NCBI RefSeq assembly: GCF_018350175.1
Contig: NC_058386.1
Coordinates: 45,694,001 to 45,758,000 of the forward strand
DNA: 64,000 nucleotides
Source of the DNA: Felis catus
Taxonomy: Eukaryota
Reading direction: 5' to 3'
Position 1 is the stretch's first letter, and every line of letters begins with the position of its first letter. The notes under the pieces were generated by a model. It was not told the origin of the DNA, ran no database searches, and saw only the letters and a list, made by a program, of their open reading frames with translations. Both the position numbers and the translations under genes were made by a program. Positions 873 through 64,000 of the stretch are shown in pieces.

Positions 873-894
873 AGAAAGAGAAAAAAGAAACCAG

Positions 895-10369: not shown

Positions 10370-12490
10370 CTGGGAGATACTTGTCAGCAGTTGTAATGTC
10401 GGTACCCAGAGAGCTTCAGTCCTAAATCTTCTGCTCCCACCTGCACCTCGTAACTATTAAGGATACTCTGGCAGCAGAGATGAACTTACCCAAAGCTTGT
10501 GATGTCTTCCAGGAGTTACGAGGAAACCCTGGGTGCATCTTCATATCTGACTAGTCCAGAAATATCCTTGAGGTTTGGCAACCCTTTTTCCAGTCTCCTA
10601 TTTACCACATAACCAATTAAAAGATCAGCACAGAGACTGGCTCCATAGTTTAATGTTTCAAAGTAAATACTTTTCTCATTACCGTGGTGGGGGGGGGGGC
10701 ACAGTCTACATGACTGGAAAACAGAATGAAAGCACAACTGTCTAAAAGATAAAATCCCTGAAATGAAAATGTTTGCTTAAGAACTTCCAATTATGAGCAC
10801 AATGCCTTCAGTGGCCTTCCTGCTGAAGTTACATTACAGGTTCCTTGCTCAGTCCTAACCAGGGCAGTTTCTCCCTAGCTACTTCATGGCTGTGGGTTCC
10901 ATCAAGACAAGAGAGGGGGGAGCACTCTGGTCTCCAGCAACTCTTCTCAGGCTCCTGATTCTCCCGCAGACAGTTGCTCACACATGCAAAGGAATGATCT
11001 ATCAAACTCATTTTGAGAATTCCTGGTGCCAGCCCTGTTCTGAGAATAGAAAATCTCAAGTCACCCTGTGGGCACGTGTCCTGACTGTTCTAAGTGCAGA
11101 AGGAGAAATCAAGGCACATGGAGACATGGCCTGCCACCGTGCAGCCAGAGAGCTTACTGGATGAAGTTCAGACAGTACTGCTGCCCACCCTAGGCAACCT
11201 TATGATGGGCCCACCTCTTCTCTTTCTCCCTCTCATTTTTCATGCTTATGTCAGTTTAAGTAGCAGTGAACTAATTTAATCATTTAGAAGTAAACAAGAC
11301 AGGGAAAAGTATTGTGTCTTTAACACAAACACCTCAAAACCTTCTGAGAAGGCAAAAATGGAGTTGAAACCAGATGGTTAGAGGAACCAACCATGTAAGG
11401 ATTCAGGGTGAGACTTCCAGGCAGAGACAACTGTGATCACCAATGTCCTAAGGAGGTAAGAAGCCTGGTGTGTTCGAGGAATAGGAGTAGGCCAGAGTTA
11501 CTGCCGTGAAGACAAGAGATGAGCAGATTGTTCGGATACGAAAACAGTAGCAGTAGATGAGCACAGAACGGGATGGATGGATACAGGATGTTTTCAGAAG
11601 ATCGAATCCAGAGGACGTGGTGCTGGGTTGCAGTGGAGACCAAAGGAACACGTCACGTGAAGAGGCGTGCTTGGGACATGTTAAGTGTCTGCTCCCTTCT
11701 GGTCATCCAGCAAAGACACAGACAAATGTGGGTCTCAGGGGACAGGTTGATGCATGAGGTACGAACGTGGGAGGTCCCGTTGTGTCCATGCTCTGTGCTG
11801 GCACCAAGGATGAAACAACCCACAGAGAGAGTGTAGATGGGAAGGGCCCTGTTAAAAGCCCTGTGGAATAGGGAGTGAGCAATAAACACTGACAAGGAGC
11901 ACAGTGGCCACTGGGGTTGCGAGAACATCACCCAAAGAGTAAAGTTTCAAATAGGCCAAAATACAAATTAGAAGAAAGGGAGGGAGGGACATTTTCAAGA
12001 ACCAGGCAATTGTTAAGTGTACCAGAGCTATCTGAGAGGTACAGTAGGTTGAGGAGAGGACATCATCAAAGGGATTCACTGGTGCCCTTGACAGCTGTTT
12101 TCATTTGGGGGGCAGGCTGATAGAAGCTGGACTGGAGAAGTTAGCAAAAAAAAAAAAAATGGTTACAGAACAAGGAAAGACTTGCTGTTTACAGCAAGCG
12201 AAATGTGGCAGTGTCTCAGAAAGATATGGGATAAGGGATGGCTTTACGTTTTACTGCCTCTTGTATCATAGATAACAGAATGATGGAGAAATAAATGGAT
12301 AGGTGATAATTGGAATCATTGCAAAGTCCTACTCCTCCTCCAGAAGATGGGCATGGGATCCAGGTGAAGGGCCTGGCCTCAGGTAGGATAAGGTCCTTTA
12401 TCCCACAGGGATAGCAGAGATACAGGTGCAGATCAGGTGTTGCTGTGAAGTGGTGAGAGTTCCTGTCTGATAACTGCTCTTTTTTCTTTT

Positions 12491-12556
12491 CTTCTTCTTC
12501 TTCTTCTTCTTCTTCTTCTTCTTCTTCTTCTTCTTCTTCTTCTTCTTCTTCTTCTT
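12491..12556. repeat. (CTT)22 microsatellite in unit 1; (CTT)8-9 in the other units
   Basis: Direct count; accounts for the longer first period. Confidence 0.95.
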
Positions 12557-13574
12557 TTTAATGTATTACCATTGAACTTCTTGAGAAGCGTGGGTCATAG
12601 AGCACTAGAAGGTTACTGCAGATAGAGAAAAGATACAGGTCAGGAGGTTGCAGGATTTCGTCTTCATTAGGGTGTACCAGGAGAGGAGAGAGGAAGGAGC
12701 AAAGACCTGTTTTGCGCGGGACAATTTATAGCCCCTTAAGCTGGCCTAATAGAATGTGACATGACCTAGTGGCCATGGAACCGGGGGTTCCCTAAAGGGC
12801 TTAATGCCTAGGCTGTAGGCGCAGTAGAGGGAGGGGGCTGGAGAACAGGCCTTTTGGGGGTGATGAGAGAGAGGAATGCTAGACAGCGACTCCAGGGAGG
12901 GGAGCGGGGTTCCTGATGTCCAGGGCCCAAGGCAGGTCCATGGGCAGCTGGATATTCGTGTTGGGGAGAACAACCCTGAGGACGGAGAGGACCGGGGGTG
13001 GCCGGTTCGTCTTCTAGGGCCTTGATAGGCCTGGAGGCAGCAGGGGAGGGAGGGCTGAGAGGAGGATAGCAACTGTGCCTTGGGACCAACGTTCACAGGC
13101 TGGAGTGGGCAGAACAATGACCAGGGGATTCGGACACGCCTCGCCCAAAGGACGGTCTGAGAGTCCGGGGATCGAGGAATAGCAGCCGGATAACAGGGGT
13201 TTGGGGCCTTGGACGAGTATGGAAACCGTCTTCAGAGCTGGGCACACAGACTGGCAAGGACCTCACTCAGTCGCCGGAACCAGGCTCAGACCCTCACAAT
13301 TGGAACGCATCCCGAAGCCCTGCCTTTTCCTCTACCGGGCGCCGGAACTTCCGGACGCGGGCCTTCCTGCTTCTGTTGGCTTAGTTCCGGGGCGGGACCA
13401 TAGAAGGCTATTGTGCCGAAGACCGTTGGCCGGGCCACTTCGATTGTACCGCAGCCTTCGCTCCCCCGCAGCAGCATTCCTCTTTGCCACCTCAGCTATG
13501 ATCTGCAGGGCTCTTTACAGGCGAACAGAGGAAACGATGGATTTTCCTTTGTGATGTGTGTCGTTCCGTTTCTC

Positions 13575-13593
13575 TGGCCAGTAGGTGGCAGTG
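13575..13593 (+). promoter_or_regulatory. CTCF core motif, unit 1
   Basis: tggccagtaggtggcagtg fits the CTCF consensus TGGCCASYAGRKGGCRS. Confidence 0.85.
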
Positions 13594-13668
13594 TTGCGCA
13601 CTGTACCAGTTCGGACCACCTCTTCCCCCGCCTTCCGAGTTTGAAAAAACTCAGAGCTGCCTTCTTTT

Positions 13669-13720
13669 AAAAAAAAAAAAACAAACAAACAAACAATAAC
13701 AACAACAACAAAACCAAACA
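13669..13720. repeat. Compound A(n)/(CAAA)n/(CAA)n tract, once per unit, variable between units
   Basis: Differs in structure at ~13669, 20092, 26520, 52247 and 58674. Confidence 0.9.
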
Positions 13721-13929
13721 CAGGACCTTCCTTTTACGCATGCGCGCTTTTGGCTGCCCTGGCTGGAAATAGGTTTTTTCTACGTGTTAGGGACCCAATA
13801 AAACATGCAGCCCTGGGATAAAATCTTTCTACCTTTCAACCTGCTTTTCTTAAACTGCTGCCGAGGTTCTTCACCAACTTGGATGTCTGCGTCTCTAAGT
13901 CGTCTGCTTTTTGGCTTTTCTCCACACGT

Positions 13930-14140
13930 AGTGATTACCAGGCGCGGAGGGGAAGCGGTACTGGGGGGTTCTTAATGAAAGAGTACAAAGATACAGGTCG
14001 GATGATGGAAATTTTGGAAATGGATGATACTGGCGATAGTTGCACAACAGTGTGAACTTCCTGATGGAACCAACCGACGCTCATTTAAACATGCTTAACA
14101 TGGTACGTTTTATGTGATCGGTTTTAGTACCACAAAAGGG
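13930..14140 (+). mobile_element. Old L1 (L1MB-like) 3' UTR fragment embedded in every unit
   Basis: gtgattaccagg...ggaaatggatgatactggcgatagttgcacaacagtgtgaac...ttaacatggtacgttttatgtgat...taccacaaaa matches the L1MB-type 3' end. Confidence 0.75.
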
Positions 14141-15120
14141 AGAGAACACAGGTGACATAGGATAGAGTTTGTCCTAAATAAGTAGTTACACAAATAGGTG
14201 GAAATGAAATGCGGATTTCAAATAAGCCGTGAAAGAACCGGTAGATAACTACTGAAAAGGTACATTGCCCCTCTTGCCTTGCTTGATCTGGGTTGGCCTG
14301 CATTCCCTCCCCATTGTCTCATCGGGTCTCCCCCTTGGTACCTATTGCCTCAGTCAGTGTGCTGCTCTGGGCTGGAAGCAGTGCTCCTCTGTATCCGCGT
14401 GTGCGTGTGTAACAAGCACATTTATTGACAGTCAGGACCCTTTCTCTATGGGTGGCCTCCCACAATACATCCTGTGGTTTAGTTTCTACTCCCTTTTGTG
14501 GCTTGGGCTTTTTTCCTCTTGAGTCAGATGGATGAAGCTTCAGTTACCCTGGTAACCATTTTTCTCTTTTTAAATCATCTCAACGTCTCATCACAAAAAG
14601 ACAAGGAGAGGGAGACAAGTGCTTTCCCATCTATCCTGGACCTTCAGGCAAGCTGACGCCTGAGACTGAGTGACCCAGTGAGGAGCTGCAGAAGAATGTT
14701 GCCATGACAACAGAATGGCTCACCCCCTTCCGGCACACAGCCCCTTCTCCCTCCCTCTCACTGCCTGATAGATCTCACTTCAGAATGGGAACGTGCTTTG
14801 GCTAGGACTGAAGGGATAGGTGTATCGTAGAGGATGGAAGGAGAGAGGTATAATCCTGAGATGCCTTCAGAAGGAACTGGGGGAGGAACCACAGCCTCCC
14901 CAAAAAAAGCATCCTGCACAACAGTGAGGTCCCAGAAGGCTACGGAAGCAATGAAAGCAGAGTAGCTCTAATGTGTTTGTGATTTTCTCCAGCCCTAAAG
15001 GATGCTACAGCATTGTATGCATGGCTCAGGCCCTGGAAAAGGGGGCCTGTGTTGTTAAAGGAGAATGGAGCCTGGCATCACTCGTGGAGGGCATGACAGA
15101 CTTGAGAAGGACCTGCTCAC

Positions 15121-15222
15121 CTCAGTGACAGCTCTTATGAGTTACTCCGCTGTGTCTGTCTGGTCTGCTCTTCCTTCTGTGCTCTGCTTTGGGGGTCCAT
15201 TTCTGGGACATGAAACGTTGTC
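15121..15222 (-). other. Predicted 102-nt non-coding exon, one per unit (also 21549, 27980, 34411, 40843, 47278, 53703, 60121)
   Basis: Minus-strand acceptor cctctcctttaactag| and donor GAG|gtgagc; both conserved in the old copy at 4786-4890. Confidence 0.55.
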
Positions 15223-16336
15223 CTAGTTAAAGGAGAGGACAAGGCAAGGATGCCCCATCCTCCTCTAACATGGACTGATTGGAGGGTGGACAGAGCAGGG
15301 GCCTGTGGGGATGGTGAGCTGGGATCACAGATTCACCAGTGCTCCTCAGACCACAAGGGCACGGTGGGTAATTGATTCTCTCTGGCTGATGTGATCTTCA
15401 TGATTATTCACTCTCAGGACTACACAGAAAAGGAGCCAAAACCCCCACTGAATTCATTGATGGTCTGCTAAGCATCTTTGATATCAATCACGTGACTGGT
15501 CTAGCTGAGGAAGTGCTCAGTCGCTCAGATTTCCACCACACCTTCCTTCTTGCCTCCAAGTGGGGAAGGTGTATGTGTGGCTTACAAGTCTCCCCGGGTG
15601 GTGCTGGAATGGGGTGTATGAAATCCTTATGTTGCTCACAGTGTCCTGGGTGGTTTCTGAGGGAAGGAGGACTCTTGTGTCCCTGGTCCACCTGGTGAAG
15701 TGACCTGCACCACCTTGCATGTGGCTGGTGTAACCTGCTTTTTCCTCTCTCCTCTTGGCCAGTACCTGCTGCTTCCTGGCTGACCCAGCCTCAGCTCACC
15801 TGTGTTGGCATGTGGAGACCTCTTGGATTCTTGGTCTCAACGTCCATCACTTCTGTGGGAAGGGCTGTTGCTCCACAGCCTCAGCTGCAGGGTCACCTAG
15901 TCTGCTGCATGCTTAGTCCTCCTTCATTAACCCCTGATGGGGAGTCACTCACTTTCCACATTTCCTTACCTGGGGATGCAGCCTCTGGAGGGTCACAGCA
16001 CAGCAGGAGCCACGATCAGCTCCAGAAAGCTAAGTTCCTAAACTTCAGCCATCCCTCTGCCCAAAGAGACTGCTGGGTCAGCCTGCAAAGTGAACTCCTC
16101 TGAGTCCCAAACGCAAATCGGTGCAAAATCCTTTCCTCCACTTGTCTGATACATCTCACTTGTCCCCTCCCATTCAGGGGAGTCTGACCTGAGAGCCTTA
16201 CCTCCATCGGCCACCTCTTTGTGTCATGTACTCCTCCAATACTGGGAGACAACATTCATCTTTGCTTGACCTTCATGCTGACAAGACTCCTATAGAGTAT
16301 ATCCAGATCCCAAAGGGAAAGCTTTAGGATTTGCTT

Positions 16337-16365
16337 TTATTATTATTAATTATTATTATTATTAA
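16337..16365. repeat. (TTA)n microsatellite, once per unit
   Basis: Interrupted by an extra A in units 1-5, pure in units 6-8. Confidence 0.9.
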
Positions 16366-16617
16366 GCAAAAAGGGATTGGCTAGTTGAGAAAGAAACATA
16401 AAAGAGAGAGGATTACCAGTCAGTCATGCACCCTTGTGCCATTGTCAGTACGGACGATCTATAAAAGTAAACTCAGAGTTCAAAGACAGACACCATGTTT
16501 TAAAAGGGTCCTAGGAGATGCTTGTCAGCAATTGTAACATCAGTACCCAGAGAGCTTCAATCCTAAATCCTCTGCTCCCACCAGCACCTGGATACTCGGC
16601 AGCAGAGATGAACTTAC

Positions 16618-16832
16618 CCAAAGCTTGTGATGTTTTCCAAGGGTTCTGGGGCAAATCTGGGTGTGTCTTCCTAGGTGACTAGTCCAGGAGTATTTGGAGG
16701 TTTGGCAACCTTTTTTCCAGTCTCCTGTTTACCACATAATGAATTAAAACAGCAGCACGGAGACTGGCTCCATAGTTTAATCGTTCAAAGTAACTACTTT
16801 TCTCATTACCGGGGGAAGCACAGTCTACATGA
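16618..16832 (-). other. Predicted 215-nt non-coding exon, one per unit (also 23046, 29477, 35908, 42340, 48774, 55199, 61617)
   Basis: Minus-strand acceptor ctttaattctgttttccag| and donor TGG|gtaagt; both conserved in the old copy at 10490-10713. Confidence 0.6.
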
Positions 16833-17101
16833 CTGGAAAACAGAATTAAAGAACAACTGCCCTAAAGGTAAAATCCCCAAAATGAAAGTGTTTGCTTGAG
16901 AACTTCCCATTCTGGGCACAATGCCTTTAGTGGCCTTCCTGCTGGAGTTACAGTACAGGTTCCTGGCTCGGTCCTAACCAGGACAGTTTCTCCCTAGCTA
17001 CTTCCATGGGTGTGGGTCCCATACAGACAATACACGTGGGAACACTCTGGCCTCCAGCAGCTCTTCTCAGGCTCCTGATTCTCCCACAGGCAGTCACTCA
17101 C

Positions 17102-17156
17102 AATGCGAAGCAATGATTTATCAAACATCCTGAGAACTCCTGGTGCCAGCTTTGTT
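17102..17156 (-). other. Possible 55-nt exon, one per unit
   Basis: Acceptor ctattttcag| and donor ATT|gtgagt; equivalent sites in the old copy at 10982-11039 (ttttctattctcag|, |gtgagc). Confidence 0.4.
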
Positions 17157-17581
17157 CTGAAAATAGTTTCATTCACCTTACGGGCACATGCCCTGACTGT
17201 CCTAAGTGCAGATGGAGAAACCAAGTCACAGGGACACTAAGGAACGCGCCTGCTGCTATGCAGCCTGCGAGTTCACTAGATGAAGTCTTGAGAGCACTGC
17301 TGCCCACCCTAGGTGTCCTTATGATGGGCCAACCTCTTCTCTTTCTTTCTCTCATTCATCATGGGTATCTCATTTTAAGCAGCAAGTGAAGTAATTTAAC
17401 GACTGAGAAGAAAGTTTTTTTGTGTGTCATTAGTACAAACACCTCAAAACCTGCAGGAGTTACCATGGGGCACACGTGTTCCTGTGGGTTTAAAGGGAGA
17501 TCATCCAGGAACCCTCCCCCGCCCCAGTGATACCCTTTCAGTAACCCACAACAAAGCAACAACAGGTGTCAGGTGACCTTT

Positions 17582-18940
17582 TATTCGGCATTCCATAACA
17601 TTAATGAGAGCCTCTCTTAATAGGTGTGTGGTGCTCTTGTACAAGCTGGTCACGTAGCACTTATCTGGGGAGTGAGAGAATACAAACCAACCAACCAACC
17701 AACCAACCAAGGAATAAGCAAATTAGTGGGCTGTTAGGAAGAAAATAACCCAGGTCCTAGGCCAGGAACAACCTACTTTACACAAGGTGGTCACGGAGAG
17801 CCTCTCTGAGGAGGCAATAATGGAGCAGAAACCAGAAGGTTAGAAGGAACCCACCATGTAAGGATCCAGGGAGAGACTCTTCCAGGCAGCGACGACTGTG
17901 ATCACCAGTGTTCTAAGGAGGGAAGAAGCATGTGCAAGGAACAGGAGTAGGCCAGAGTTACTGCCGTGAAGACAAGAGATGAGCAGATTGTTCGGATACG
18001 AAAACAGTAGCAGTAGATGAGCACAGAACGGGATGGATGGATACAGGATGTTTTCAGAAGATCGAATCCAGAGGACGTGGTGCTGGGTTGCAGTGGAGAC
18101 CAAAGGAACACGTCACGTGAAGAGGCGTGCTTGGGACATGTTAAGTGTCTGCTCCCTTCTGGTCATCCAGCAAAGACACAGACAAATGTGGGTCTCAGGG
18201 GACAGGTTGATGCATGAGGTACGAACGTGGGAGGTCCCGTTGTGTCCATGCTCTGTGCTGGCACCAAGGATGAAACAACCCACAGAGAGAGTGTAGATGG
18301 GAAGGGCCCTGTTAAAAGCCCTGTGGAATAGGGAGTGAGCAATAAACACTGACAAGGAGCACAGTGGCCACTGGGGTTGCGAGAACATCACCCAAAGAGT
18401 AAAGTTTCAAATAGGCCAAAATACAAATTAGAAGAAAGGGAGGGAGGGACATTTTCAAGAACCAGGCAATTGTTAAGTGTACCAGAGCTATCTGAGAGGT
18501 ACAGTAGGTTGAGGAGAGGACATCATCAAAGGGATTCACTGGTGCCCTTGACAGCTGTTTTCATTTGGGGGGCAGGCTGATAGAAGCTGGACTGGAGAAG
18601 TTAGCAAAAAAAAAAAAAAAATGGTTACAGAACAAGGGAAGACTTGCTGTTTACAGCAAGCGAAATGTGGCAGTGTCTCAGAAAGATATGGGATAAGGGA
18701 TGGCTTTACGTTTTACTGCCTCTTGTATCATAGATAACAGAATGATGGAGAAATAAATGGATAGGTGATAATTGGAATCATTGCAAAGTCCTACTCCTCC
18801 TCCAGAAGATGGGCATGGGATCCAGGTGAAGGGCCTGGCCTCAGGTAGGATAAGGTCCTTTATCCCACAGGGATAGCAGAGATACAGGTGCAGATCAGGT
18901 GTTGCTGTGAAGTGGTGAGAGTTCCTGTCTGATAACTGCT
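17582..18940 (-). mobile_element. Ancient LINE-2 embedded in every unit (contains (AACC)n and A(n) tracts)
   Basis: L2 3' end-like ttattcggcattccataacattaatgagagcctct, followed by ggtggtcacggagagcctctctgaggagg, cttccaggcag and ggtgcccttgacag, typical antisense L2 phrases. Confidence 0.75.
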
Positions 18941-19998
18941 CTTTTTTCTTTTCTTCTTCTTCTTCTTCTTCTTCTTCTTTTTAATGTATTACCATTGAAC
19001 TTCTTGAGAAGCGTGGGTCATGGAGCACTAGAAGGTTACTGCAGATAGAGAAAAGATACAGGTCAGGAGGTTGCAGGATTTCGTCTTCATTAGGGTGTAC
19101 CAGGAGAGGAGAGAGGAAGGAGCAAAGACCTGTTTTGCGCGGGACAATTTATAGCCCCTTAAGCTGGCCTAATAGAATGTGACATGACCTAGTGGCCATG
19201 GAACCGGGGGTTCCCTAAAGGGCTTAATGCCTAGGCTGTAGGCGCAGTAGAGGGAGGGGGCTGGAGAACAGGCCTTTTGGGGGTGATGAGAGAGAGGAAT
19301 GCTAGACAGCGACTCCAGGGAGGGGAGCGGGGTTCCTGATGTCCAGGGCCCAAGGCAGGTCCATGGGCAGCCGGATATTCGTGTTGGGGAGAACAACCCT
19401 GAGGACGGAGAGGACCGGGGGTGGCCGGTTCGTCTTCTAGGGCCTTGATAGGCCTGGAGGCAGCAGGGGAGGGAGGGCTGAGAGGAGGATAGCAACTGTG
19501 CCTTGGGACCAACGTTCACAGGCTGGAGTGGGCAGAACAATGACCAGGGGATTCGGACACGCCTCGCCCAAAGGACGGTCTGAGAGTCCGGGGATCGGGG
19601 AATAGCAGCCGGATAACAGGGGTTTGGGGCCTTGGACGAGTATGGAAACCGTCTTCAGAGCTGGGCACACAGACTGGCAAGGACCTCACTCAGTCGCCGG
19701 AACCAGGCTCAGACCCTCACAATTGGAACGCATCCCGAAGCCCTGCCTTTTCCTCTACCGGGCGCCGGAACTTCCGGACGCGGGCCTTCCTGCTTCTGTT
19801 GGCTTAGTTCCGGGGCGGGACCGTAGAAGGCTATTGTGCCGAAGACCGTTCGGCCGGGCCACTTCGATTGTACCGCACCCTTCGCTCCCCCGCAGCAGCA
19901 TTCCTCCTTGCCACCTCAGCTATGATCTGCAGGGCTCTTTACAGGCGAGCAGAGGAAACGATGGATTTTCCTTTGTGATGTGTGTCGTTCCGTTTCTC

Positions 19999-20017
19999 TG
20001 GCCAGTAGGTGGCAGTG
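19999..20017 (+). promoter_or_regulatory. CTCF core motif, unit 2
   Basis: tggccagtaggtggcagtg. Confidence 0.85.
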
Positions 20018-26000: not shown

Positions 26001-26426
26001 GGACGGTCTGAGAGTCCGGGGATCGGGGAATAGCAGCCGGATAACAGGGGTTTGGGGCCTTGGACGAGTATGGAAACCGTCTTCAGAGCTGGGCACACAG
26101 ACTGGCAAGGACCTCACTCAGTCGCCGGAACCAGGCTCAGACCCTCACAATTGGAACGCATCCCGAAGCCCTGCCTTTTCCTCTACCGGGCGCCGGAACT
26201 TCCGGACGCGGGCCTTCCTGCTTCTGTTGGCTTAGTTCCGGGGCGGGACCGTAGAAGGCTATTGTGCCGAAGACCGTTCGGCCGGGCCACTTCGATTGTA
26301 CCGCACCCTTCGCTCCCCCGCAGCAGCATTCCTCCTTGCCACCTCAGCTATGATCTGCAGGGCTCTTTACAGGCGAGCAGAGGAAACGATGGATTTTCCT
26401 TTGTGATGTGTGTCGTTCCGTTTCTC

Positions 26427-26445
26427 TGGCCAGTAGGTGGCAGTG
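26427..26445 (+). promoter_or_regulatory. CTCF core motif, unit 3
   Basis: tggccagtaggtggcagtg. Confidence 0.85.
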
Positions 26446-32857: not shown

Positions 32858-32876
32858 TGGCCAGTAGGTGGCAGTG
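32858..32876 (+). promoter_or_regulatory. CTCF core motif, unit 4
   Basis: tggccagtaggtggcagtg. Confidence 0.85.
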
Positions 32877-39289: not shown

Positions 39290-39308
39290 TGGCCAGTAGG
39301 TGGCAGTG
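39290..39308 (+). promoter_or_regulatory. CTCF core motif, unit 5
   Basis: tggccagtaggtggcagtg. Confidence 0.85.
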
Positions 39309-45300: not shown

Positions 45301-45724
45301 ACGGTCTGAGAGTCCGGGGATCGGGGAATAGCAGCCGGATAACAGGGGTTTGGGGCCTTGGACGAGTATGGAAACCGTCTTCAGAGCTGGGCACACAGAC
45401 TGGCAAGGACCTCACTCAGTCGCCGGAACCAGGCTCAGACCCTCACAATTGGAACGCATCCCGAAGCCCTGCCTTTTCCTCTACCGGGCGCCGGAACTTC
45501 CGGACGCGGGCCTTCCTGCTTCTGTTGGCTTAGTTCCGGGGCGGGACCGTAGAAGGCTATTGTGCCGAAGACCGTTCGGCCGGGCCACTTCGATTGTACC
45601 GCACCCTTCGCTCCCCCGCAGCAGCATTCCTCCTTGCCACCTCAGCTATGATCTGCAGGGCTCTTTACAGGCGAGCAGAGGAAACGATGGATTTTCCTTT
45701 GTGATGTGTGTCGTTCCGTTTCTC

Positions 45725-45743
45725 TGGCCAGTAGGTGGCAGTG
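45725..45743 (+). promoter_or_regulatory. CTCF core motif, unit 6
   Basis: tggccagtaggtggcagtg. Confidence 0.85.
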
Positions 45744-51700: not shown

Positions 51701-52153
51701 AGGGGATTCGGACACGCCTCGCCCAAAGGACGGTCTGAGAGTCCGGGGATCGGGGAATAGCAGCCGGATAACAGGGGTTTGGGGCCTTGGACGAGTATGG
51801 AAACCGTCTTCAGAGCTGGGCACACAGACTGGCAAGGACCTCACTCAGTCGCCGGAACCAGGCTCAGACCCTCACAATTGGAACGCATCCCGAAGCCCTG
51901 CCTTTTCCTCTACCGGGCGCCGGAACTTCCGGACGCGGGCCTTCCTGCTTCTGTTGGCTTAGTTCCGGGGCGGGACCGTAGAAGGCTATTGTGCCGAAGA
52001 CCGTTCGGCCGGGCCACTTCGATTGTACCGCACCCTTCGCTCCCCCGCAGCAGCATTCCTCCTTGCCACCTCAGCTATGATCTGCAGGGCTCTTTACAGG
52101 CGAGCAGAGGAAACGATGGATTTTCCTTTGTGATGTGTGTCGTTCCGTTTCTC

Positions 52154-52172
52154 TGGCCAGTAGGTGGCAGTG
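52154..52172 (+). promoter_or_regulatory. CTCF core motif, unit 7
   Basis: tggccagtaggtggcagtg. Confidence 0.85.
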
Positions 52173-55100: not shown

Positions 55101-58100
55101 GCTTGTCAGCAATTGTAACATCAGTACCCAGAGAGCTTCAATCCTAAATCCTCTGCTCCCACCAGCACCTGGATACTCGGCAGCAGAGATGAACTTACCC
55201 AAAGCTTGTGATGTTTTCCAAGGGTTCTGGGGCAAATCTGGGTGTGTCTTCCTAGGTGACTAGTCCAGGAGTATTTGGAGGTTTGGCAACCTTTTTTCCA
55301 GTCTCCTGTTTACCACATAATGAATTAAAACAGCAGCACGGAGACTGGCTCCATAGTTTAATCGTTCAAAGTAACTACTTTTCTCATTACCGGGGGAAGC
55401 ACAGTCTACATGACTGGAAAACAGAATTAAAGAACAACTGCCCTAAAGGTAAAATCCCCAAAATGAAAGTGTTTGCTTGAGAACTTCCCATTCTGGGCAC
55501 AATGCCTTTAGTGGCCTTCCTGCTGGAGTTACAGTACAGGTTCCTGGCTCGGTCCTAACCAGGACAGTTTCTCCCTAGCTACTTCCATGGGTGTGGGTCC
55601 CATACAGACAATACACGTGGGAACACTCTGGCCTCCAGCAGCTCTTCTCAGGCTCCTGATTCTCCCACAGGCAGTCACTCACAATGCGAAGCAATGATTT
55701 ATCAAACATCCTGAGAACTCCTGGTGCCAGCTTTGTTCTGAAAATAGTTTCATTCACCTTACGGGCACATGCCCTGACTGTCCTAAGTGCAGATGGAGAA
55801 ACCAAGTCACAGGGACACTAAGGAACGCGCCTGCTGCTATGCAGCCTGCGAGTTCACTAGATGAAGTCTTGAGAGCACTGCTGCCCACCCTAGGTGTCCT
55901 TATGATGGGCCAACCTCTTCTCTTTCTTTCTCTCATTCATCATGGGTATCTCATTTTAAGCAGCAAGTGAAGTAATTTAACGACTGAGAAGAAAGTTTTT
56001 TTGTGTGTCATTAGTACAAACACCTCAAAACCTGCAGGAGTTACCATGGGGCACACGTGTTCCTGTGGGTTTAAAGGGAGATCATCCAGGAACCCTCCCC
56101 CGCCCCAGTGATACCCTTTCAGTAACCCACAACAAAGCAACAACAGGTGTCAGGTGACCTTTTATTCGGCATTCCATAACATTAATGAGAGCCTCTCTTA
56201 ATAGGTGTGTGGTGCTCTTGTACAAGCTGGTCACGTAGCACTTATCTGGGGAGTGAGAGAATACAAACCAACCAACCAACCAACCAACCAAGGAATAAGC
56301 AAATTAGTGGGCTGTTAGGAAGAAAATAACCCAGGTCCTAGGCCAGGAACAACCTACTTTACACAAGGTGGTCACGGAGAGCCTCTCTGAGGAGGCAATA
56401 ATGGAGCAGAAACCAGAAGGTTAGAAGGAACCCACCATGTAAGGATCCAGGGAGAGACTCTTCCAGGCAGCGACGACTGTGATCACCAGTGTTCTAAGGA
56501 GGGAAGAAGCATGTGCAAGGAACAGGAGTAGGCCAGAGTTACTGCCGTGAAGACAAGAGATGAGCAGATTGTTCGGATACGAAAACAGTAGCAGTAGATG
56601 AGCACAGAACGGGATGGATGGATACAGGATGTTTTCAGAAGATCGAATCCAGAGGACGTGGTGCTGGGTTGCAGTGGAGACCAAAGGAACACGTCACGTG
56701 AAGAGGCGTGCTTGGGACATGTTAAGTGTCTGCTCCCTTCTGGTCATCCAGCAAAGACACAGACAAATGTGGGTCTCAGGGGACAGGTTGATGCATGAGG
56801 TACGAACGTGGGAGGTCCCGTTGTGTCCATGCTCTGTGCTGGCACCAAGGATGAAACAACCCACAGAGAGAGTGTAGATGGGAAGGGCCCTGTTAAAAGC
56901 CCTGTGGAATAGGGAGTGAGCAATAAACACTGACAAGGAGCACAGTGGCCACTGGGGTTGCGAGAACATCACCCAAAGAGTAAAGTTTCAAATAGGCCAA
57001 AATACAAATTAGAAGAAAGGGAGGGAGGGACATTTTCAAGAACCAGGCAATTGTTAAGTGTACCAGAGCTATCTGAGAGGTACAGTAGGTTGAGGAGAGG
57101 ACATCATCAAAGGGATTCACTGGTGCCCTTGACAGCTGTTTTCATTTGGGGGGCAGGCTGATAGAAGCTGGACTGGAGAAGTTAGCAAAAAAAAAAAAAA
57201 AAAAATGGTTACAGAACAAGGGAAGACTTGCTGTTTACAGCAAGCGAAATGTGGCAGTGTCTCAGAAAGATATGGGATAAGGGATGGCTTTACGTTTTAC
57301 TGCCTCTTGTATCATAGATAACAGAATGATGGAGAAATAAATGGATAGGTGATAATTGGAATCATTGCAAAGTCCTACTCCTCCTCCAGAAGATGGGCAT
57401 GGGATCCAGGTGAAGGGCCTGGCCTCAGGTAGGATAAGGTCCTTTATCCCACAGGGATAGCAGAGATACAGGTGCAGATCAGGTGTTGCTGTGAAGTGGT
57501 GAGAGTTCCTGTCTGATAACTGCTCTTTTTTCTTTTCTTCTTCTTCTTCTTCTTCTTCTTTTTAATGTATTACCATTGAACTTCTTGAGAAGCGTGGGTC
57601 ATGGAGCACTAGAAGGTTACTGCAGATAGAGAAAAGATACAGGTCAGGAGGTTGCAGGATTTCGTCTTCATTAGGGTGTACCAGGAGAGGAGAGAGGAAG
57701 GAGCAAAGACCTGTTTTGCGCGGGACAATTTATAGCCCCTTAAGCTGGCCTAATAGAATGTGACATGACCTAGTGGCCATGGAACCGGGGGTTCCCTAAA
57801 GGGCTTAATGCCTAGGCTGTAGGCGCAGTAGAGGGAGGGGGCTGGAGAACAGGCCTTTTGGGGGTGATGAGAGAGAGGAATGCTAGACAGCGACTCGAGG
57901 GAGGGGAGCGGGGTTCCTGATGTCCAGGGCCCAAGGCAGGTCCATGGGCAGCTGGATATTCGTGTTGGGGAGAACAACCCTGAGGACGGAGAGGACCGGG
58001 GGTGGCCGGTTCGTCTTCTAGGGCCTTGATAGGCCTGGAGGCAGCAGGGGAGGGAGGGCTGAGAGGAGGATAGCAACTGTGCCTTGGGACCAACGTTCAC

Positions 58101-58579
58101 AGGCTGGAGTGGGCAGAACAATGACCAGGGGATTCGGACACGCCTCGCCCAAAGGACGGTCTGAGAGTCCGGGGATCGGGGAATAGCAGCCGGATAACAG
58201 GGGTTTGGGGCCTTGGACGAGTATGGAAACCGTCTTCAGAGCTGGGCACACAGACTGGCAAGGACCTCACTCAGTCGCCGGAACCAGGCTCAGACCCTCA
58301 CAATTGGAACGCATCCCGAAGCCCTGCCTTTTCCTCTACCGGGCGCCGGAACTTCCGGACGCGGGCCTTCCTGCTTCTGTTGGCTTAGTTCCGGGGCGGG
58401 ACCGTAGAAGGCTATTGTGCCGAAGACCGTTCGGCCGGGCCACTTCGATTGTACCGCACCCTTCGCTCCCCCGCAGCAGCATTCCTCCTTGCCACCTCAG
58501 CTATGATCTGCAGGGCTCTTTACAGGCGAGCAGAGGAAACGATGGATTTTCCTTTGTGATGTGTGTCGTTCCGTTTCTC

Positions 58580-58598
58580 TGGCCAGTAGGTGGCAGTG
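58580..58598 (+). promoter_or_regulatory. CTCF core motif, unit 8
   Basis: tggccagtaggtggcagtg. Confidence 0.85.
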
Positions 58599-61500
58599 TT
58601 GCGCACTGTACCAGTTCGGACCACCTCTTCCCCCGCCTTCCGAGTTTGAAAAAACTCAGAGCTGCCTTCTTTTAAAAAAAAAAAAAAAACAAAAACAAAA
58701 AAAAAAAAAAAAACCAAACACAGGACCTTCCTTTTACGCATGCGCGCTTTTGGCTGCCCTGGCTGGAAATAGGTTTTTTCTACGTGTTAGGGACCCAATA
58801 AAACATGCAGCCCTGGGATAAAATCTTTCTACCTTTCAACCTGCTTTTCTTAAACTGCTGCCGAGGTTCTTCACCAACTTGGATGTCTGCGTCTCTAAGT
58901 CGTCTGCTTTTTGGCTTTTCTCCACACGTAGTGATTACCAGGCGCGGAGGGGAAGCGGTACTGGGGGGTTCTTAATGAAAGAGTACAAAGATACAGGTCG
59001 GATGATGGAAATTTTGGAAATGGATGATACTGGCGATAGTTGCACAACAGTGTGAACTTCCTGATGGAACCAACCGATGCTCATTTAAACATGCTTAACA
59101 TGGTACGTTTTATGTGATCGGTTTTAGTACCACAAAAGGGAGAGAACACAGGTGACATAGGATAGAGTTTGTCCTAAATAAGTAGTTACACAAATAGGTG
59201 GAAATGAAATGCGGATTTCAAATAAGCCGTGAAAGAACCGGTAGATAACTACTGAAAAGGTACATTGCCCCTCTTGCCTTGCTTGATCTGGGTTGGCCTG
59301 CATTCCCTCCCCATTGTCTCATCGGGTCTCCCCCTTGGTACCTATTGCCTCAGTCAGTGTGCTGCTCTGGGCTGGAAGCAGTGCTCCTCTGTATCCGCGT
59401 GTGCGTGTGTAACAAGCACATTTATTGACAGTCAGGACCCTTTCTCTATGGGTGGCCTCCCACAATACATCCTGTGGTTTAGTTTCTACTCCCTTTTGTG
59501 GCTTGGGCTTTTTTCCTCTTGAGTCAGATGGATGAAGCTTCAGTTACCCTGGTAACCATTTTTCTCTTTTTAAATCATCTCAACGTCTCATCACAAAAAG
59601 ACAAGGAGAGGGAGACAAGTGCTTTCCCATCTATCCTGGACCTTCAGGCAAGCTGACGCCTGAGACTGAGTGACCCAGTGAGGAGCTGCAGAAGAATGTT
59701 GCCATGACAACAGAATGGCTCACCCCCTTCCGGCACACAGCCCCTTCTCCCTCCCTCTCACTGCCTGATAGATCTCACTTCAGAATGGGAACGTGCTTTG
59801 GCTAGGACTGAAGGGATAGGTGTATCGTAGAGGATGGAAGGAGAGAGGTATAATCCTGAGATGCCTTCAGAAGGAACTGGGGGAGGAACCACAGCCTCCC
59901 CAAAAAAAGCATCCTGCACAACAGTGAGGTCCCAGAAGGCTACGGAAGCAATGAAAGCAGAGTAGCTCTAATGTGTTTGTGATTTTCTCCAGCCCTAAAG
60001 GATGCTACAGCATTGTATGCATGGCTCAGGCCCTGGAAAAGGGGGCCTGTGTTGTTAAAGGAGAATGGAGCCTGGCATCACTCGTGGAGGGCATGACAGA
60101 CTTGAGAAGGACCTGCTCACCTCAGTGACAGCTCTTATGAGTTACTCCGCTGTGTCTGTCTGGTCTGCTCTTCCTTCTGTGCTCTGCTTTGGGGGTCCAT
60201 TTCTGGGACATGAAACGTTGTCCTAGTTAAAGGAGAGGACAAGGCAAGGATGCCCCATCCTCCTCTAACATGGACTGATTGGAGGGTGGACAGAGCAGGG
60301 GCCTGTGGGGATGGTGAGCTGGGATCACAGATTCACCAGTGCTCCTCAGACCACAAGGGCACGGTGGGTAATTGATTCTCTCTGGCTGATGTGATCTTCA
60401 TGATTATTCACTCTCAGGACTACACAGAAAAGGAGCCAAAACCCCCACTGAATTCATTGATGGTCTGCTAAGCATCTTTGATATCAATCACGTGACTGGT
60501 CTAGCTGAGGAAGTGCTCAGTCGCTCAGATTTCCACCACACCTTCCTTCTTGCCTCCAAGTGGGGAAGGTGTATGTGTGGCTTACAAGTCTCCCCGGGTG
60601 GTGCTGGAATGGGGTGTATGAAATCCTTATGTTGCTCACAGTGTCCTGGGTGGTTTCTGAGGGAAGGAGGACTCTTGTGTCCCTGGTCCACCTGGTGAAG
60701 TGACCTGCACCACCTTGCATGTGGCTGGTGTAACCTGCTTTTTCCTCTCTCCTCTTGGCCAGTACCTGCTGCTTCCTGGCTGACCCAGCCTCAGCTCACC
60801 TGTGTTGGCATGTGGAGACCTCTTGGATTCTTGGTCTCAACGTCCATCACTTCTGTGGGAAGGGCTGTTGCTCCACAGCCTCAGCTGCAGGGTCACCTAG
60901 TCTGCTGCATGCTTAGTCCTCCTTCATTAACCCCTGATGGGGAGTCACTCACTTTCCACATTTCCTTACCTGGGGATGCAGCCTCTGGAGGGTCACAGCA
61001 CAGCAGGAGCCACGATCAGCTCCAGAAAGCTAAGTTCCTAAACTTCAGCCATCCCTCTGCCCAAAGAGACTGCTGGGTCAGCCTGCAAAGTGAACTCCTC
61101 TGAGTCCCAAACGCAAATCGGTGCAAAATCCTTTCCTCCACTTGTCTGATACATCTCACTTGTCCCCTCCCATTCAGGGGAGTCTGACCTGAGAGCCTTA
61201 CCTCCATCGGCCACCTCTTTGTGTCATGTACTCCTCCAATACTGGGAGACAACATTCATCTTTGCTTGACCTTCATGCTGACAAGACTCCTATAGAGTAT
61301 ATCCAGATCCCAAAGGGAAAGCTTTAGGATTTGCTTTTATTATTATTATTATTATTATTATTAAGCAAAAAGGGATTGGCTAGTTGAGAAAGAAACATAA
61401 AAGAGAGAGGATTACCAGTCAGTCATGCACCCTTGTGCCATTGTCAGTACGGACGATCTATAAAAGTAAACTCAGAGTTCAAAGACAGACACCATGTTTT

Positions 61501-64000
61501 AAAAGGGTCCTAGGAGATGCTTGTCAGCAATTGTAACATCAGTACCCAGAGAGCTTCAATCCTAAATCCTCTGCTCCCACCAGCACCTGGATACTCGGCA
61601 GCAGAGATGAACTTACCCAAAGCTTGTGATGTTTTCCAAGGGTTCTGGGGCAAATCTGGGTGTGTCTTCCTAGGTGACTAGTCCAGGAGTATTTGGAGGT
61701 TTGGCAACCTTTTTTCCAGTCTCCTGTTTACCACATAATGAATTAAAACAGCAGCACGGAGACTGGCTCCATAGTTTAATCGTTCAAAGTAACTACTTTT
61801 CTCATTACCGGGGGAAGCACAGTCTACATGACTGGAAAACAGAATTAAAGAACAACTGCCCTAAAGGTAAAATCCCCAAAATGAAAGTGTTTGCTTGAGA
61901 ACTTCCCATTCTGGGCACAATGCCTTTAGTGGCCTTCCTGCTGGAGTTACAGTACAGGTTCCTGGCTCGGTCCTAACCAGGACAGTTTCTCCCTAGCTAC
62001 TTCCATGGGTGTGGGTCCCATACAGACAATACACGTGGGAACACTCTGGCCTCCAGCAGCTCTTCTCAGGCTCCTGATTCTCCCACAGGCAGTCACTCAC
62101 AATGCGAAGCAATGATTTATCAAACATCCTGAGAACTCCTGGTGCCAGCTTTGTTCTGAAAATAGTTTCATTCACCTTACGGGCACATGCCCTGACTGTC
62201 CTAAGTGCAGATGGAGAAACCAAGTCACAGGGACACTAAGGAACGCGCCTGCTGCTATGCAGCCTGCGAGTTCACTAGATGAAGTCTTGAGAGCACTGCT
62301 GCCCACCCTAGGTGTCCTTATGATGGGCCAACCTCTTCTCTTTCTTTCTCTCATTCATCATGGGTATCTCATTTTAAGCAGCAAGTGAAGTAATTTAACG
62401 ACTGAGAAGAAAGTTTTTTTGTGTGTCATTAGTACAAACACCTCAAAACCTGCAGGAGTTACCATGGGGCACACGTGTTCCTGTGGGTTTAAAGGGAGAT
62501 CATCCAGGAACCCTCCCCCGCCCCAGTGATACCCTTTCAGTAACCCACAACAAAGCAACAACAGGTGTCAGGTGACCTTTTATTCGGCATTCCATAACAT
62601 TAATGAGAGCCTCTCTTAATAGGTGTGTGGTGCTCTTGTACAAGCTGGTCACGTAGCACTTATCTGGGGAGTGAGAGAATACAAACCAACCAACCAACCA
62701 ACCAACCAAGGAATAAGCAAATTAGTGGGCTGTTAGGAAGAAAATAACCCAGGTCCTAGGCCAGGAACAACCTACTTTACACAAGGTGGTCACGGAGAGC
62801 CTCTCTGAGGAGGCAATAATGGAGCAGAAACCAGAAGGTTAGAAGGAACCCACCATGTAAGGATCCAGGGAGAGACTCTTCCAGGCAGCGACGACTGTGA
62901 TCACCAGTGTTCTAAGGAGGGAAGAAGCATGTGCAAGGAACAGGAGTAGGCCAGAGTTACTGCCGTGAAGACAAGAGATGAGCAGATTGTTCGGATACGA
63001 AAACAGTAGCAGTAGATGAGCACAGAACGGGATGGATGGATACAGGATGTTTTCAGAAGATCGAATCCAGAGGACGTGGTGCTGGGTTGCAGTGGAGACC
63101 AAAGGAACACGTCACGTGAAGAGGCGTGCTTGGGACATGTTAAGTGTCTGCTCCCTTCTGGTCATCCAGCAAAGACACAGACAAATGTGGGTCTCAGGGG
63201 ACAGGTTGATGCATGAGGTACGAACGTGGGAGGTCCCGTTGTGTCCATGCTCTGTGCTGGCACCAAGGATGAAACAACCCACAGAGAGAGTGTAGATGGG
63301 AAGGGCCCTGTTAAAAGCCCTGTGGAATAGGGAGTGAGCAATAAACACTGACAAGGAGCACAGTGGCCACTGGGGTTGCGAGAACATCACCCAAAGAGTA
63401 AAGTTTCAAATAGGCCAAAATACAAATTAGAAGAAAGGGAGGGAGGGACATTTTCAAGAACCAGGCAATTGTTAAGTGTACCAGAGCTATCTGAGAGGTA
63501 CAGTAGGTTGAGGAGAGGACATCATCAAAGGGATTCACTGGTGCCCTTGACAGCTGTTTTCATTTGGGGGGCAGGCTGATAGAAGCTGGACTGGAGAAGT
63601 TAGCAAAAAAAAAAAAAAAAAAAATGGTTACAGAACAAGGGAAGACTTGCTGTTTACAGCAAGCGAAATGTGGCAGTGTCTCAGAAAGATATGGGATAAG
63701 GGATGGCTTTACGTTTTACTGCCTCTTGTATCATAGATAACAGAATGATGGAGAAATAAATGGATAGGTGATAATTGGAATCATTGCAAAGTCCTACTCC
63801 TCCTCCAGAAGATGGGCATGGGATCCAGGTGAAGGGCCTGGCCTCAGGTAGGATAAGGTCCTTTATCCCACAGGGATAGCAGAGATACAGGTGCAGATCA
63901 GGTGTTGCTGTGAAGTGGTGAGAGTTCCTGTCTGATAACTGCTCTTTTTTCTTTTCTTCTTCTTCTTCTTCTTCTTCTTTTTAATGTATTACCATTGAAC

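What the first reader, a model, noticed from the sequence alone, without database searches (positions are those of the whole stretch)
11483..64000. 6.43-kb macrosatellite whose unit is a complete promoter + CTCF + exon cassette: candidate homogenised FIRRE-type locus in a cat
Seen: at least 8 near-identical units, each with one CpG-rich block, one CTCF motif and several minus-strand exon-like segments, and no credible ORF. Known: the X-linked loci FIRRE and DXZ4 are CTCF-rich repeat loci that are transcribed and anchor inactive-X superloops, and FIRRE is built from local repeats with repeated exons (RRD). Inference: this is such a locus. FIRRE fits best because of the repeated exons, and because I recall cat DXZ4 monomers being shorter (unverified). 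Human and mouse FIRRE repeats are diverged from one another, so a near-perfect tandem array would mean a lineage-specific re-amplification in which copy number sets both CTCF-site number and RNA repeat number. If it is not FIRRE/DXZ4/ICCE, it is an undescribed locus of the same design.
Basis: partly seen in the sequence, partly recalled or inferred. Interest (0 to 1): 0.85.

Follow-up and report, generated by a model that had tools for sequence, protein, structure and literature searches.

The report
Cat X-linked CTCF macrosatellite, probably ICCE
A real, almost perfectly homogenised 6.43-kb tandem repeat on a cat X chromosome carries one CpG island and one strong CTCF site per unit; its position rules out FIRRE and DXZ4 and fits the third known X-inactivation loop anchor, ICCE.

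Summary
The window contains a 6.43-kb macrosatellite with seven complete units, one partial unit and one unit cut off by the window end. Pairs of units differ by 0-9 substitutions. Two old, decayed, SINE-invaded copies sit at the left edge, so the array starts near 4704, not 11483. Each unit has a 706-bp CpG island containing an ETS site and a GC box, and one strong CTCF core on the + strand. Units have no transposon pieces, no internal repeats, no Pfam or Rfam match and no conserved ORF.

The FIRRE call is not supported. Earlier notes from this scan place an Xq28 LAGE3/CTAG cluster on the same sequence piece, 80.7 Mb further on. Cat FIRRE lies within about 20 Mb of Xq28 and cat DXZ4 about 31-35 Mb from it. 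Cat DXZ4 units are also 4.55-4.6 kb, not 6.43 kb. The position (about 0.36 of the X length) matches ICCE, which lies in an NBDY intron in human and dog. The CTCF site shares a 12-nt block with the DXZ4/ICCE-type motif.

ICCE membership is inferred, not proven. No NBDY exon is visible, no YY1 motif is present, and no cross-species alignment was possible. The exon-like segments are not above chance, and the tools for sequencing reads and encoding contigs were unavailable.

The parts
4704..7620 (+). Decayed edge copy A of the unit (unit positions 1451-2752 and 4940-6423; the middle is deleted), 67-70% identical to the core unit
   Evidence: blastn, nhmmer
7624..7637 (+). Decayed CTCF core CCAGTAGGTGaCAG in copy A. 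The 21-nt block GCCAGTAGGTGNCAGTGTTGC keeps 20 of 21 bases, but the changed base is a core G
7623..11342 (+). Decayed edge copy B (unit positions 2-99, 229-489, 509-1440, 2936-3879), 75-81% identical, interrupted by carnivore SINE pieces at 7712-8015 and 9943-10070
11343..13575 (+). First homogeneous copy, partial (unit positions about 4229-6424), 96.7% identical to the core unit. It joins copy B abruptly at 11342/11343
13576..58580 (+). Seven complete units of 6424-6435 bp, starting at 13576, 20000, 26428, 32859, 39291, 45726 and 52155. Pairs differ by 0-9 substitutions and neighbouring units are most alike
58581..64000 (+). Eighth unit, cut off by the end of the window. The array continues beyond it
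25826..26531 (.). CpG island of one unit (706 bp, GC 0.588, observed/expected 0.71, 43 CpG). The same island is at 12975-13673, 19398-20103, 32257-32962, 38689-39394, 45124-45829, 51553-52258 and 57979-58683
26198..26247 (+). Promoter-type motifs inside the island: ETS ACTTCCGG (26198-26205) and GC box GGGGCGGG (26240-26247), about 190-230 bp left of the CTCF core. These are motif matches only; promoter activity was not tested
13578..13591 (+). CTCF core CCAGTAGGTGGCAG
20002..20015 (+). CTCF core CCAGTAGGTGGCAG. Its extension TGGCAGTGTTGC (20010-20021) is identical to the centre of the published DXZ4 34-mer
26430..26443 (+). CTCF core
32861..32874 (+). CTCF core
39293..39306 (+). CTCF core
45728..45741 (+). 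CTCF core
52157..52170 (+). CTCF core
58583..58596 (+). CTCF core
20092..20140 (+). A22 plus (CAAA/CAA)n microsatellite about 75 bp right of the CTCF core. It is the most length-variable part of the unit
16618..16832 (-). 215-nt exon-like segment (ttttccag|...|gtaagt). Both sites are kept in decayed copy B. Transcription was not tested

Best explanation

Shown here: a 6.43-kb unit of otherwise unique sequence is repeated head to tail at least nine times. Each unit presents one CpG island carrying an ETS site and a GC box, with one strong CTCF core at the island's right edge. All the cores point the same way, on the + strand.

Inferred evolution: the core of the array is kept nearly identical by ongoing unequal exchange or gene conversion. 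The leftmost copies have escaped this process, decayed to 67-81% identity, lost CpGs and the CTCF core G, and taken up SINEs. The tandem locus is therefore old and its present uniformity is young.

Inferred function: as at human ICCE and DXZ4, the CpG islands stay unmethylated and CTCF-bound on the inactive X. The block of same-direction CTCF sites would stall loop-extruding cohesin, making the array a superloop anchor. If the sequence piece runs p to q, the motifs point toward DXZ4 about 47 Mb away. DXZ4 Repeat A carries reverse-direction motifs, so the pair would be convergent. Copy number then sets the number of CTCF sites.
For: Structure of the array.

CpG island and CTCF site. The CTCF core matches the loop-anchor consensus CCACNAGGTGGCAG, which I quote from memory as that of Rao et al. 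2014, at 13 of 14 positions.

Unit content: no SINE or LINE pieces and no internal repeats. The human ICCE monomer is described the same way.

Motif kinship: the site's 12-nt block TGGCAGTGTTGC equals the centre of the conserved mammalian DXZ4 34-mer. ICCE Site-6 and Site-7 are reported to share this DXZ4-type core.

Position: an Xq28 LAGE3/CTAG cluster with PLXNA3 and SLC6A8 scraps lies 80.73 Mb beyond the window on the same piece. For an X of about 130 Mb this puts the window near 47-49 Mb, about 0.36 of the length. Human ICCE is at 56.8 of 156 Mb (0.36) and dog ICCE at 47.9 Mb. Cat DXZ4 is at about 94 Mb, so the window is about 46-47 Mb from it. Brashear et al. report a cat ICCE with human-like proportional spacing from DXZ4.

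Unit size: 6.43 kb is close to the human ICCE unit (about 5-5.4 kb) and unlike cat DXZ4 (4.55-4.6 kb).

Orientation: Repeat A of cat DXZ4 carries a reverse-direction CTCF site.
Against: No NBDY exon or any other anchoring gene is visible in the 4.7 kb of non-repeat flank.

X linkage and position rest on earlier AI notes about another window, which I could not re-check, and on X-chromosome coordinates that I partly recalled from memory.

No YY1 motif (AANATGGC) occurs anywhere in the unit, whereas ICCE Site-6 and Site-7 have an adjacent conserved YY1 site in most species.

The full DXZ4 34-mer is not matched: 16 mismatches to the consensus and 11 to the IUPAC form.

Human ICCE units are heterogeneous and carry up to four CTCF motifs on both strands. 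Here the units are near-identical with one motif each.

CTCF binding, methylation, transcription and looping were not testable.
Confidence: 0.6

Rival explanations
1. A felid- or carnivore-specific X-linked macrosatellite of the same design (CpG island plus CTCF site per unit) that lies near ICCE but is not ICCE. That would make it an undescribed locus.
For: Membership in the NBDY locus was not shown. No YY1 motif is present. The unit is homogeneous and has a single motif, unlike human ICCE. The position estimate has an error of a few Mb.
Against: The proportional position matches ICCE in human and dog. The decayed edge copies argue for an old locus. The CTCF core is of the DXZ4/ICCE type. A cat ICCE with tandem structure and CTCF enrichment has been located by others.
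Confidence: 0.25
2. It is the cat FIRRE locus, re-amplified into a perfect array.
For: It is X-linked, rich in CTCF sites and non-coding, and has exon-like minus-strand segments with consensus splice sites.
Against: The window is 80.7 Mb from the Xq28 cluster. ENOX2 is at 110.2 Mb in felCat9. ENOX2 and ARHGAP36 lie about 1 Mb from FIRRE in human, and the felCat9 X is about 130 Mb (both from my own knowledge). FIRRE must therefore be within about 20 Mb of Xq28. The donor-site excess is not significant. No short RRD-like repeat exists inside the unit.
Confidence: 0.02
3. It is part of the cat DXZ4 compound macrosatellite.
For: It shares 12 nt with the DXZ4 CTCF consensus, and each unit has a CpG island with promoter-type motifs plus a CTCF site, as in DXZ4.
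Against: Cat DXZ4 units are 4554 bp (Repeat A) and 4607 bp (Repeat B), with a standard deviation of 46 bp across three felids and within-array distances of 0.013-0.028. Here the unit is 6.43 kb and the distance about 0.0005. DXZ4 lies at about 94 Mb, roughly 47 Mb from this window. The 34-mer criterion used to annotate DXZ4 sites (13 mismatches or fewer) is failed, with 16.
Confidence: 0.02
4. The array is real, but its near-perfect identity and copy number are partly products of assembly or polishing of a long repeat.
For: Neighbouring units differ by 0-2 substitutions in 6.4 kb. Long arrays exceed typical read lengths, as noted for cat DXZ4.
Against: The units carry an ordered gradient of private and shared variants and length differences. 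That pattern is what true unequal exchange produces, not a collapsed consensus. The decayed edge copies give a natural boundary.
Confidence: 0.05
5. It is an amplified gene or retro-element array, such as a cancer/testis gene amplicon or a provirus tandem.
For: X-linked arrays are often cancer/testis gene amplicons. An A-rich tail follows the CpG island.
Against: The longest ORF is 201-202 aa. None of the ten ORFs scanned, including the longest, has a meaningful Pfam match, and the frame is broken in the decayed copy. There is no Rfam match and no similarity to the SINEs or L1 piece in the flank.
Confidence: 0.03

Closest known systems
[quoted passage not shown]
   Same: Both are X-linked large tandem repeats at about 0.36 of the chromosome length. 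Units are multi-kilobase (5-5.4 kb in human, 6.43 kb here), made of otherwise unique sequence with microsatellites and no SINE or LINE pieces. Both carry CTCF motifs with the DXZ4-type core and are non-coding.
   Different: The human array has about 10 heterogeneous units with up to four CTCF motifs on both strands and an adjacent YY1 site. Here at least nine units are 99.9% identical, each with one forward CTCF motif inside a CpG island and no YY1 motif. Location within NBDY is not shown.
DXZ4 macrosatellite (human: 3-kb units, more than 99% identical; cat: compound Repeat A / Repeat B arrays of 4.55-4.6 kb units, Bredemeyer et al. 2021, PMC8662614)
   Same: Both are homogeneous arrays in which each unit is a CpG island with promoter-type sequence plus one CTCF site, all sites in one orientation. 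The motif centre TGGCAGTGTTGC is identical. In homogeneity this array resembles human DXZ4 more than human ICCE.
   Different: The position differs (about 47 Mb from cat DXZ4), the unit length differs, and the 34-bp DXZ4 signature is not kept outside the central 12 nt. The motif is on the opposite strand to that of DXZ4 Repeat A.
FIRRE (lncRNA locus with local repeats, including the RRD repeat, and clustered CTCF/YY1 sites)
   Same: It is an X-linked, CTCF-dense, repeat-built superloop partner of DXZ4.
   Different: FIRRE lies distal to DXZ4 near ENOX2/ARHGAP36/IGSF1, more than 60 Mb from this window. It is built from short local repeats spread across a gene, not a homogeneous 6.4-kb macrosatellite.

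Membership tests
X-linked CTCF-binding macrosatellites (DXZ4 / ICCE / FIRRE class) | Large tandem repeat with a multi-kilobase unit | tested here: met
   6.43-kb period, at least 9 copies plus 2 decayed copies
X-linked CTCF-binding macrosatellites (DXZ4 / ICCE / FIRRE class) | High density of CTCF motifs, one or more per unit | tested here: met
   One exact core per unit; 8 matches against 0.04 expected
X-linked CTCF-binding macrosatellites (DXZ4 / ICCE / FIRRE class) | Location on the X chromosome | not testable with these tools
   Rests on earlier notes that an Xq28 LAGE3/CTAG cluster lies on the same piece, 80.7 Mb away.
X-linked CTCF-binding macrosatellites (DXZ4 / ICCE / FIRRE class) | CTCF binding, hypomethylation and superloop contacts specific to the inactive X | not testable with these tools
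   Needs ChIP, methylation and Hi-C data from female cat cells
ICCE | Embedded in an intron of NBDY, between UBQLN2 and SPIN3 | tested here: inconclusive
The proportional position (about 0.36 of the X) fits.
ICCE | Conserved CTCF Site-6 / Site-7 motifs with a DXZ4-like core | tested here: inconclusive
   The 12-nt block TGGCAGTGTTGC equals the DXZ4 consensus centre. The Site-6 and Site-7 logos exist only as figures, so the 50-57 bp signatures could not be compared.
ICCE | YY1 motif abutting or within 10 bp of the CTCF motif | tested here: not met
   No AANATGGC on either strand of the unit. The paper itself reports an exception (elephant Site-6), so this feature is accessory rather than universal.
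ICCE | Weak but detectable sequence similarity to the human or dog ICCE repeat | not tested
   No mammalian genome collection is available, and human sequence was deliberately not sought
DXZ4 | Immediately downstream of PLS3 | tested here: not met
   Cat DXZ4 is at about 94 Mb. The window is about 47 Mb from it by the same-piece distance to Xq28.
DXZ4 | Cat unit length of 4.55-4.6 kb (Repeat A / Repeat B) | tested here: not met
   The unit is 6424-6435 bp against 4554 and 4607 bp
DXZ4 | Conserved 34-bp CTCF signature (13 mismatches or fewer, or a match to the published IUPAC pattern) | tested here: not met
   16 mismatches to the 34-mer and 11 to the IUPAC form. No match at 3 mismatches or fewer.
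FIRRE | Position near ENOX2/ARHGAP36/IGSF1, distal to DXZ4 | tested here: not met
   ENOX2 is at 110.2 Mb in felCat9. The window is 80.7 Mb before Xq28.
FIRRE | Spliced lncRNA with repeated RRD exons | not testable with these tools
   No RNA data. Exon-like sites are not above chance.

The most novel reading that the evidence does not exclude
In cats, ICCE (or a new locus at its position) has been re-homogenised into a DXZ4-grade macrosatellite. Every unit is a CpG-island promoter plus one forward CTCF site, convergent with the reverse sites of DXZ4 Repeat A. Like cat DXZ4, it would be a fast-evolving, copy-number-variable X-linked array that could influence inactive-X folding, X-chromosome segregation or hybrid incompatibility.
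Probability: 0.3. Interest if true: 0.6.

Novelty: new member of a known kind. Interest (0 to 1): 0.42.

Why it matters
ICCE is the least studied of the three tandem-repeat anchors of the inactive X. A 2026 preprint (PMC13622753) reports that ICCE copy number in humans (0-13 units of 5.4 kb) is one of the two strongest inherited determinants of age-related X loss in cis.

In cats, the sister locus DXZ4 is the mapped hybrid-sterility locus, and rapid macrosatellite change there is thought to drive incompatibility (PMC8662614). In the papers I could search, the cat ICCE is only given a location; its structure is not described.

A cat ICCE that is long, nearly perfectly homogeneous and single-orientation would give a clean natural system. 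It could test whether the number and direction of CTCF sites in these arrays set superloop strength, and whether ICCE also evolves fast among felids.

Tried and rejected
No test of expression, strand, sex-specific depth or copy number was possible.

**Searches that found nothing**
- Tandem Repeats Finder reports nothing, because its maximum period is 500 bp.
- Rfam at gathering thresholds, positions 1-27000: no match.
- Pfam on ten unit ORFs: only one sub-threshold chance match.
- The DXZ4 34-nt IUPAC motif has no match at 3 mismatches or fewer.
- No YY1 consensus occurs in the unit.

**Leads that did not hold up**
- The second TGGCAGTGT in each unit (for example at 25096) lacks a CTCF core.
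- The minus-strand excess of splice donors is not significant.
- The unit has no similarity to flank transposons and no internal repeats.

**Literature and earlier notes**
- Table 4 of Brashear et al., which holds the cat ICCE coordinates, is not in the text library, and no supplements are held.
- Searches of the scan's earlier notes for other anchoring genes on this piece found only the Xq28 cluster.

**Readings rejected**
- FIRRE and DXZ4 were rejected on position, and DXZ4 also on unit length.
- A coding or retro-element array was rejected for lack of any conserved frame or domain.
Full report
**1.

A 20-mer offset histogram of the window has nearly all its mass at 6418-6436 bp. A BLAST of unit 20000-26430 against the window gives an unbroken head-to-tail series from 11343 to 64000 at 99.5-100% identity. 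Tandem Repeats Finder reports nothing only because its longest period is 500 bp.

In one phase, the units start at 13576, 20000, 26428, 32859, 39291, 45726, 52155 and 58581. Seven are complete (6424-6435 bp) and the eighth is cut off by the window end. A partial unit (unit positions about 4229-6424, 96.7% identity) occupies 11343-13575.

Pairs of units differ by 0-9 substitutions. Neighbours are the most alike, and ordered blocks of shared variants run along the array. Most length variation lies in one A-rich microsatellite. This pattern is what stepwise unequal exchange produces.

**2. The array is older and longer than the finding says**

Left of 11343 lie two decayed copies:
- Copy A, 4704-7620, covers unit positions 1451-2752 and 4940-6423 at 67-70% identity.
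- Copy B, 7623-11342, covers unit positions 2-99, 229-489, 509-1440 and 2936-3879 at 75-81% identity.

Copy B carries pieces similar to the carnivore tRNA-derived SINEs seen in the flank. The homogeneous units contain no SINE or L1 piece and no internal repeat.

The island-equivalent region of copy A has lost CpGs (observed/expected 0.38-0.45, against 0.62-0.71 in the core). A locus with edge copies 20-33% diverged and a core about 0.05% diverged is an old tandem array under ongoing homogenisation. It is not simply a recent amplification.

**3. Anatomy of the unit**

- One CpG island of 699-706 bp (for example 25826-26531: GC 0.588, observed/expected 0.71, 43 CpG). The remaining 4.9 kb of the unit has observed/expected 0.22.
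- Inside the island, an ETS site ACTTCCGG (26198) and a GC box GGGGCGGG (26240). These are promoter-type motifs, not evidence of promoter activity.
- At the island's right edge, one exact match to CCASYAGRKGGCRS, namely CCAGTAGGTGGCAG. It is on the + strand in all eight units (8 matches, 0.04 expected, 0 of 100 shuffles reach 8).
- This core matches CCACNAGGTGGCAG, which I quote from memory as the loop-anchor consensus of Rao et al. 2014, at 13 of 14 positions. No other site in the unit has fewer than two mismatches.
- About 75 bp to the right lies an A22 plus (CAAA)n microsatellite.

In decayed copy A, the 21-nt block GCCAGTAGGTGNCAGTGTTGC keeps 20 of 21 bases and is the longest conserved block in the alignment. 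The one change hits a core G.

**4. The unit is not coding**

The longest ORF is 201-202 aa, starts at TTG, lies in the CpG island and runs into the poly-A tract. Ten of the unit's 18 ORFs of at least 70 aa, including the longest, were scanned and gave no meaningful Pfam match. There is no Rfam match. The alignment to copy A has 1-, 4- and 8-nt gaps inside the longest ORF, so no reading frame has been conserved.

**5. The exon-like segments are unproven**

The 215-nt segment 16618-16832 on the minus strand is flanked by ttctgttttccag| and |gtaagt. Both sites are unchanged in decayed copy B. With only two sequences at 87% identity, conserved runs of that length are expected about once by chance.

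One unit has five consensus-like donor sites on the minus strand and none on the plus strand. A first-order Markov model expects 2.0 (P=0.08). Pyrimidine-rich acceptor-like sites on the minus strand follow from the strand's base composition.

Transcription is therefore neither shown nor excluded.

**6. Which locus is it?**

The flank contains carnivore SINEs and an L1 3' piece. Earlier follow-up notes from this scan identify the genome as a cat. They place an X-linked LAGE3/CTAG cluster, with PLXNA3 and SLC6A8 fragments (Xq28), on the same sequence piece, 80,726,297 bases beyond this window. I could not re-check that window, so this is a lead taken on trust. The distance itself is index metadata.

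Because Xq28 is at the far end of the long arm, the piece must run p to q. The window therefore sits about 80.8 Mb before Xq28.

Published anchors for the other candidates:
- Cat DXZ4 lies at 93.7-94.2 Mb (felCat8), next to PLS3 and AGTR2.
- ENOX2 lies at 110.23 Mb in felCat9 and 108.98 Mb in AnAms1.0.

ENOX2 is the neighbour of ARHGAP36 and lies about 1 Mb from FIRRE in human (my own knowledge).

With an X of about 130 Mb (my own knowledge), FIRRE is at most about 20 Mb from Xq28 and DXZ4 about 31-35 Mb from it. Both are excluded by a wide margin.

DXZ4 is also excluded by unit length. Its units are 4554 and 4607 bp with a standard deviation of 46 bp across three felids, and within-array distances are 0.013-0.028.

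The window's estimated position is about 47-49 Mb, or 0.36 of the X. That matches human ICCE ('X56', 56.8 of 156 Mb) and dog ICCE (canFam3 chrX:47.9 Mb). The implied distance of about 46-47 Mb to DXZ4 agrees with the statement that cat ICCE-DXZ4 spacing is proportionally like human.

**7. Evidence inside the window for DXZ4/ICCE kinship**

The CTCF site and its 3' shoulder, TGGCAGTGTTGC, are identical over 12 nt to the centre of the conserved mammalian DXZ4 34-mer used to annotate felid DXZ4. Six of those bases lie outside the 14-nt CTCF core used for the scan. Chance identity is roughly 1 in 1,000 to 1 in 10,000, and this was noticed after the fact.

Westervelt and Chadwick report that ICCE Site-6 and Site-7 share this DXZ4-type core and propose that ICCE derives from DXZ4. 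Outside the 12-mer the DXZ4 signature is not kept: 16 of 34 mismatches, and 11 to the IUPAC form.

The unit also lacks any YY1 consensus. ICCE sites normally have an adjacent YY1 motif, with elephant Site-6 as the published exception. The unit is free of interspersed repeats, as is reported for the human ICCE monomer.

**8. Likely mechanism**

Shown: a block of at least eight same-direction strong CTCF cores, each inside a CpG island, spaced 6.43 kb apart.

Inferred from the known behaviour of human DXZ4 and ICCE: on the inactive X the islands stay hypomethylated and CTCF-bound. The array then stalls extruding cohesin and anchors superloops.

With the piece running p to q, the motifs point toward DXZ4. 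Its PLS3-proximal Repeat A has reverse-direction motifs, so the pair is convergent, which is the arrangement loop extrusion requires. This assumes that 'reverse' in that paper refers to a p-to-q oriented X.

Copy number would set the number of CTCF sites. Unequal exchange keeps units identical, which also predicts copy-number polymorphism.

**9. Comparison and novelty**

The closest known locus is ICCE, and in homogeneity the array resembles human DXZ4. It differs from human ICCE in three ways:
- Human ICCE has about 10 heterogeneous units of about 5-5.4 kb, with up to four motifs on both strands plus YY1.
- Here the units are near-identical.
- Here each unit has a single forward motif and no YY1.

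A cat ICCE has been located before (Brashear et al. 2021). I found no description of its structure in the searchable literature.

I class it as a new member of a known kind. Confidence is about 0.6 that it is ICCE itself and about 0.25 that it is a separate locus of the same design.

**10. Limits**

- No reads, RNA, methylation, cross-species sequence or gene annotation could be consulted.
- X linkage and position depend on earlier unchecked notes and on approximate chromosome coordinates.
- No human sequence was sought or compared.

Noticed in passing
window 2278-2311: In the non-repeat flank, GGAATTGGGTGGATGGCAGTGTCCAGCCATGAGA has 13 mismatches to the DXZ4 34-mer. That is just inside the lenient threshold used to annotate felid DXZ4 CTCF sites. 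It shares GATGGCAGTGT with the consensus, but its canonical CTCF core is weak.
   Followed up: partly
window 13576-19999 and 58581-64000: Units 1 and 8 share three variants that units 2-7 lack (alignment columns 72, 93 and 107-111), which gives a k-mer offset of 45,005 bp. This may hint at a higher-order period of seven units or at an exchange between distant units. The window ends too soon to tell.
   Followed up: partly
window 24000-26000 and the same phase in every unit: A stretch of about 2 kb has strong positive GC skew (0.21-0.30) on the + strand, just left of the CpG island. A minus-strand transcript starting in the island would be C-rich there, so the region is not of the usual R-loop-prone type for that direction.
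   Followed up: no
window 24345-24678 (repeated in each unit): A second, borderline CpG-enriched block (334 bp, 12 CpG, observed/expected 0.61) holds a weak reverse-strand CTCF-like site, CCAGAAGGGAGCAG, at 24577 (2 mismatches, one of them in the GGC core).
   Followed up: partly
window 1-1400: The flank holds carnivore tRNA-derived SINEs (about 480-650 and 1172-1375, plus a partial one at 1-110) and an L1 ORF2 3' fragment (about 180-470), consistent with a carnivore genome.
   Followed up: no
window 1670-1795: An AT-rich minisatellite (ttttattataatttaataa-like units) lies in the flank.
   Followed up: no
window 3247-3270: A G-homopolymer of about 20 nt lies in the flank and may be a point of assembly or polishing uncertainty.
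   Followed up: no
window 8745-8967 and 10139-10361: Inside decayed copy B, two 223-bp segments are 78% identical to each other and match nothing in the core unit. This is an old local duplication or an unidentified repeat.
   Followed up: no
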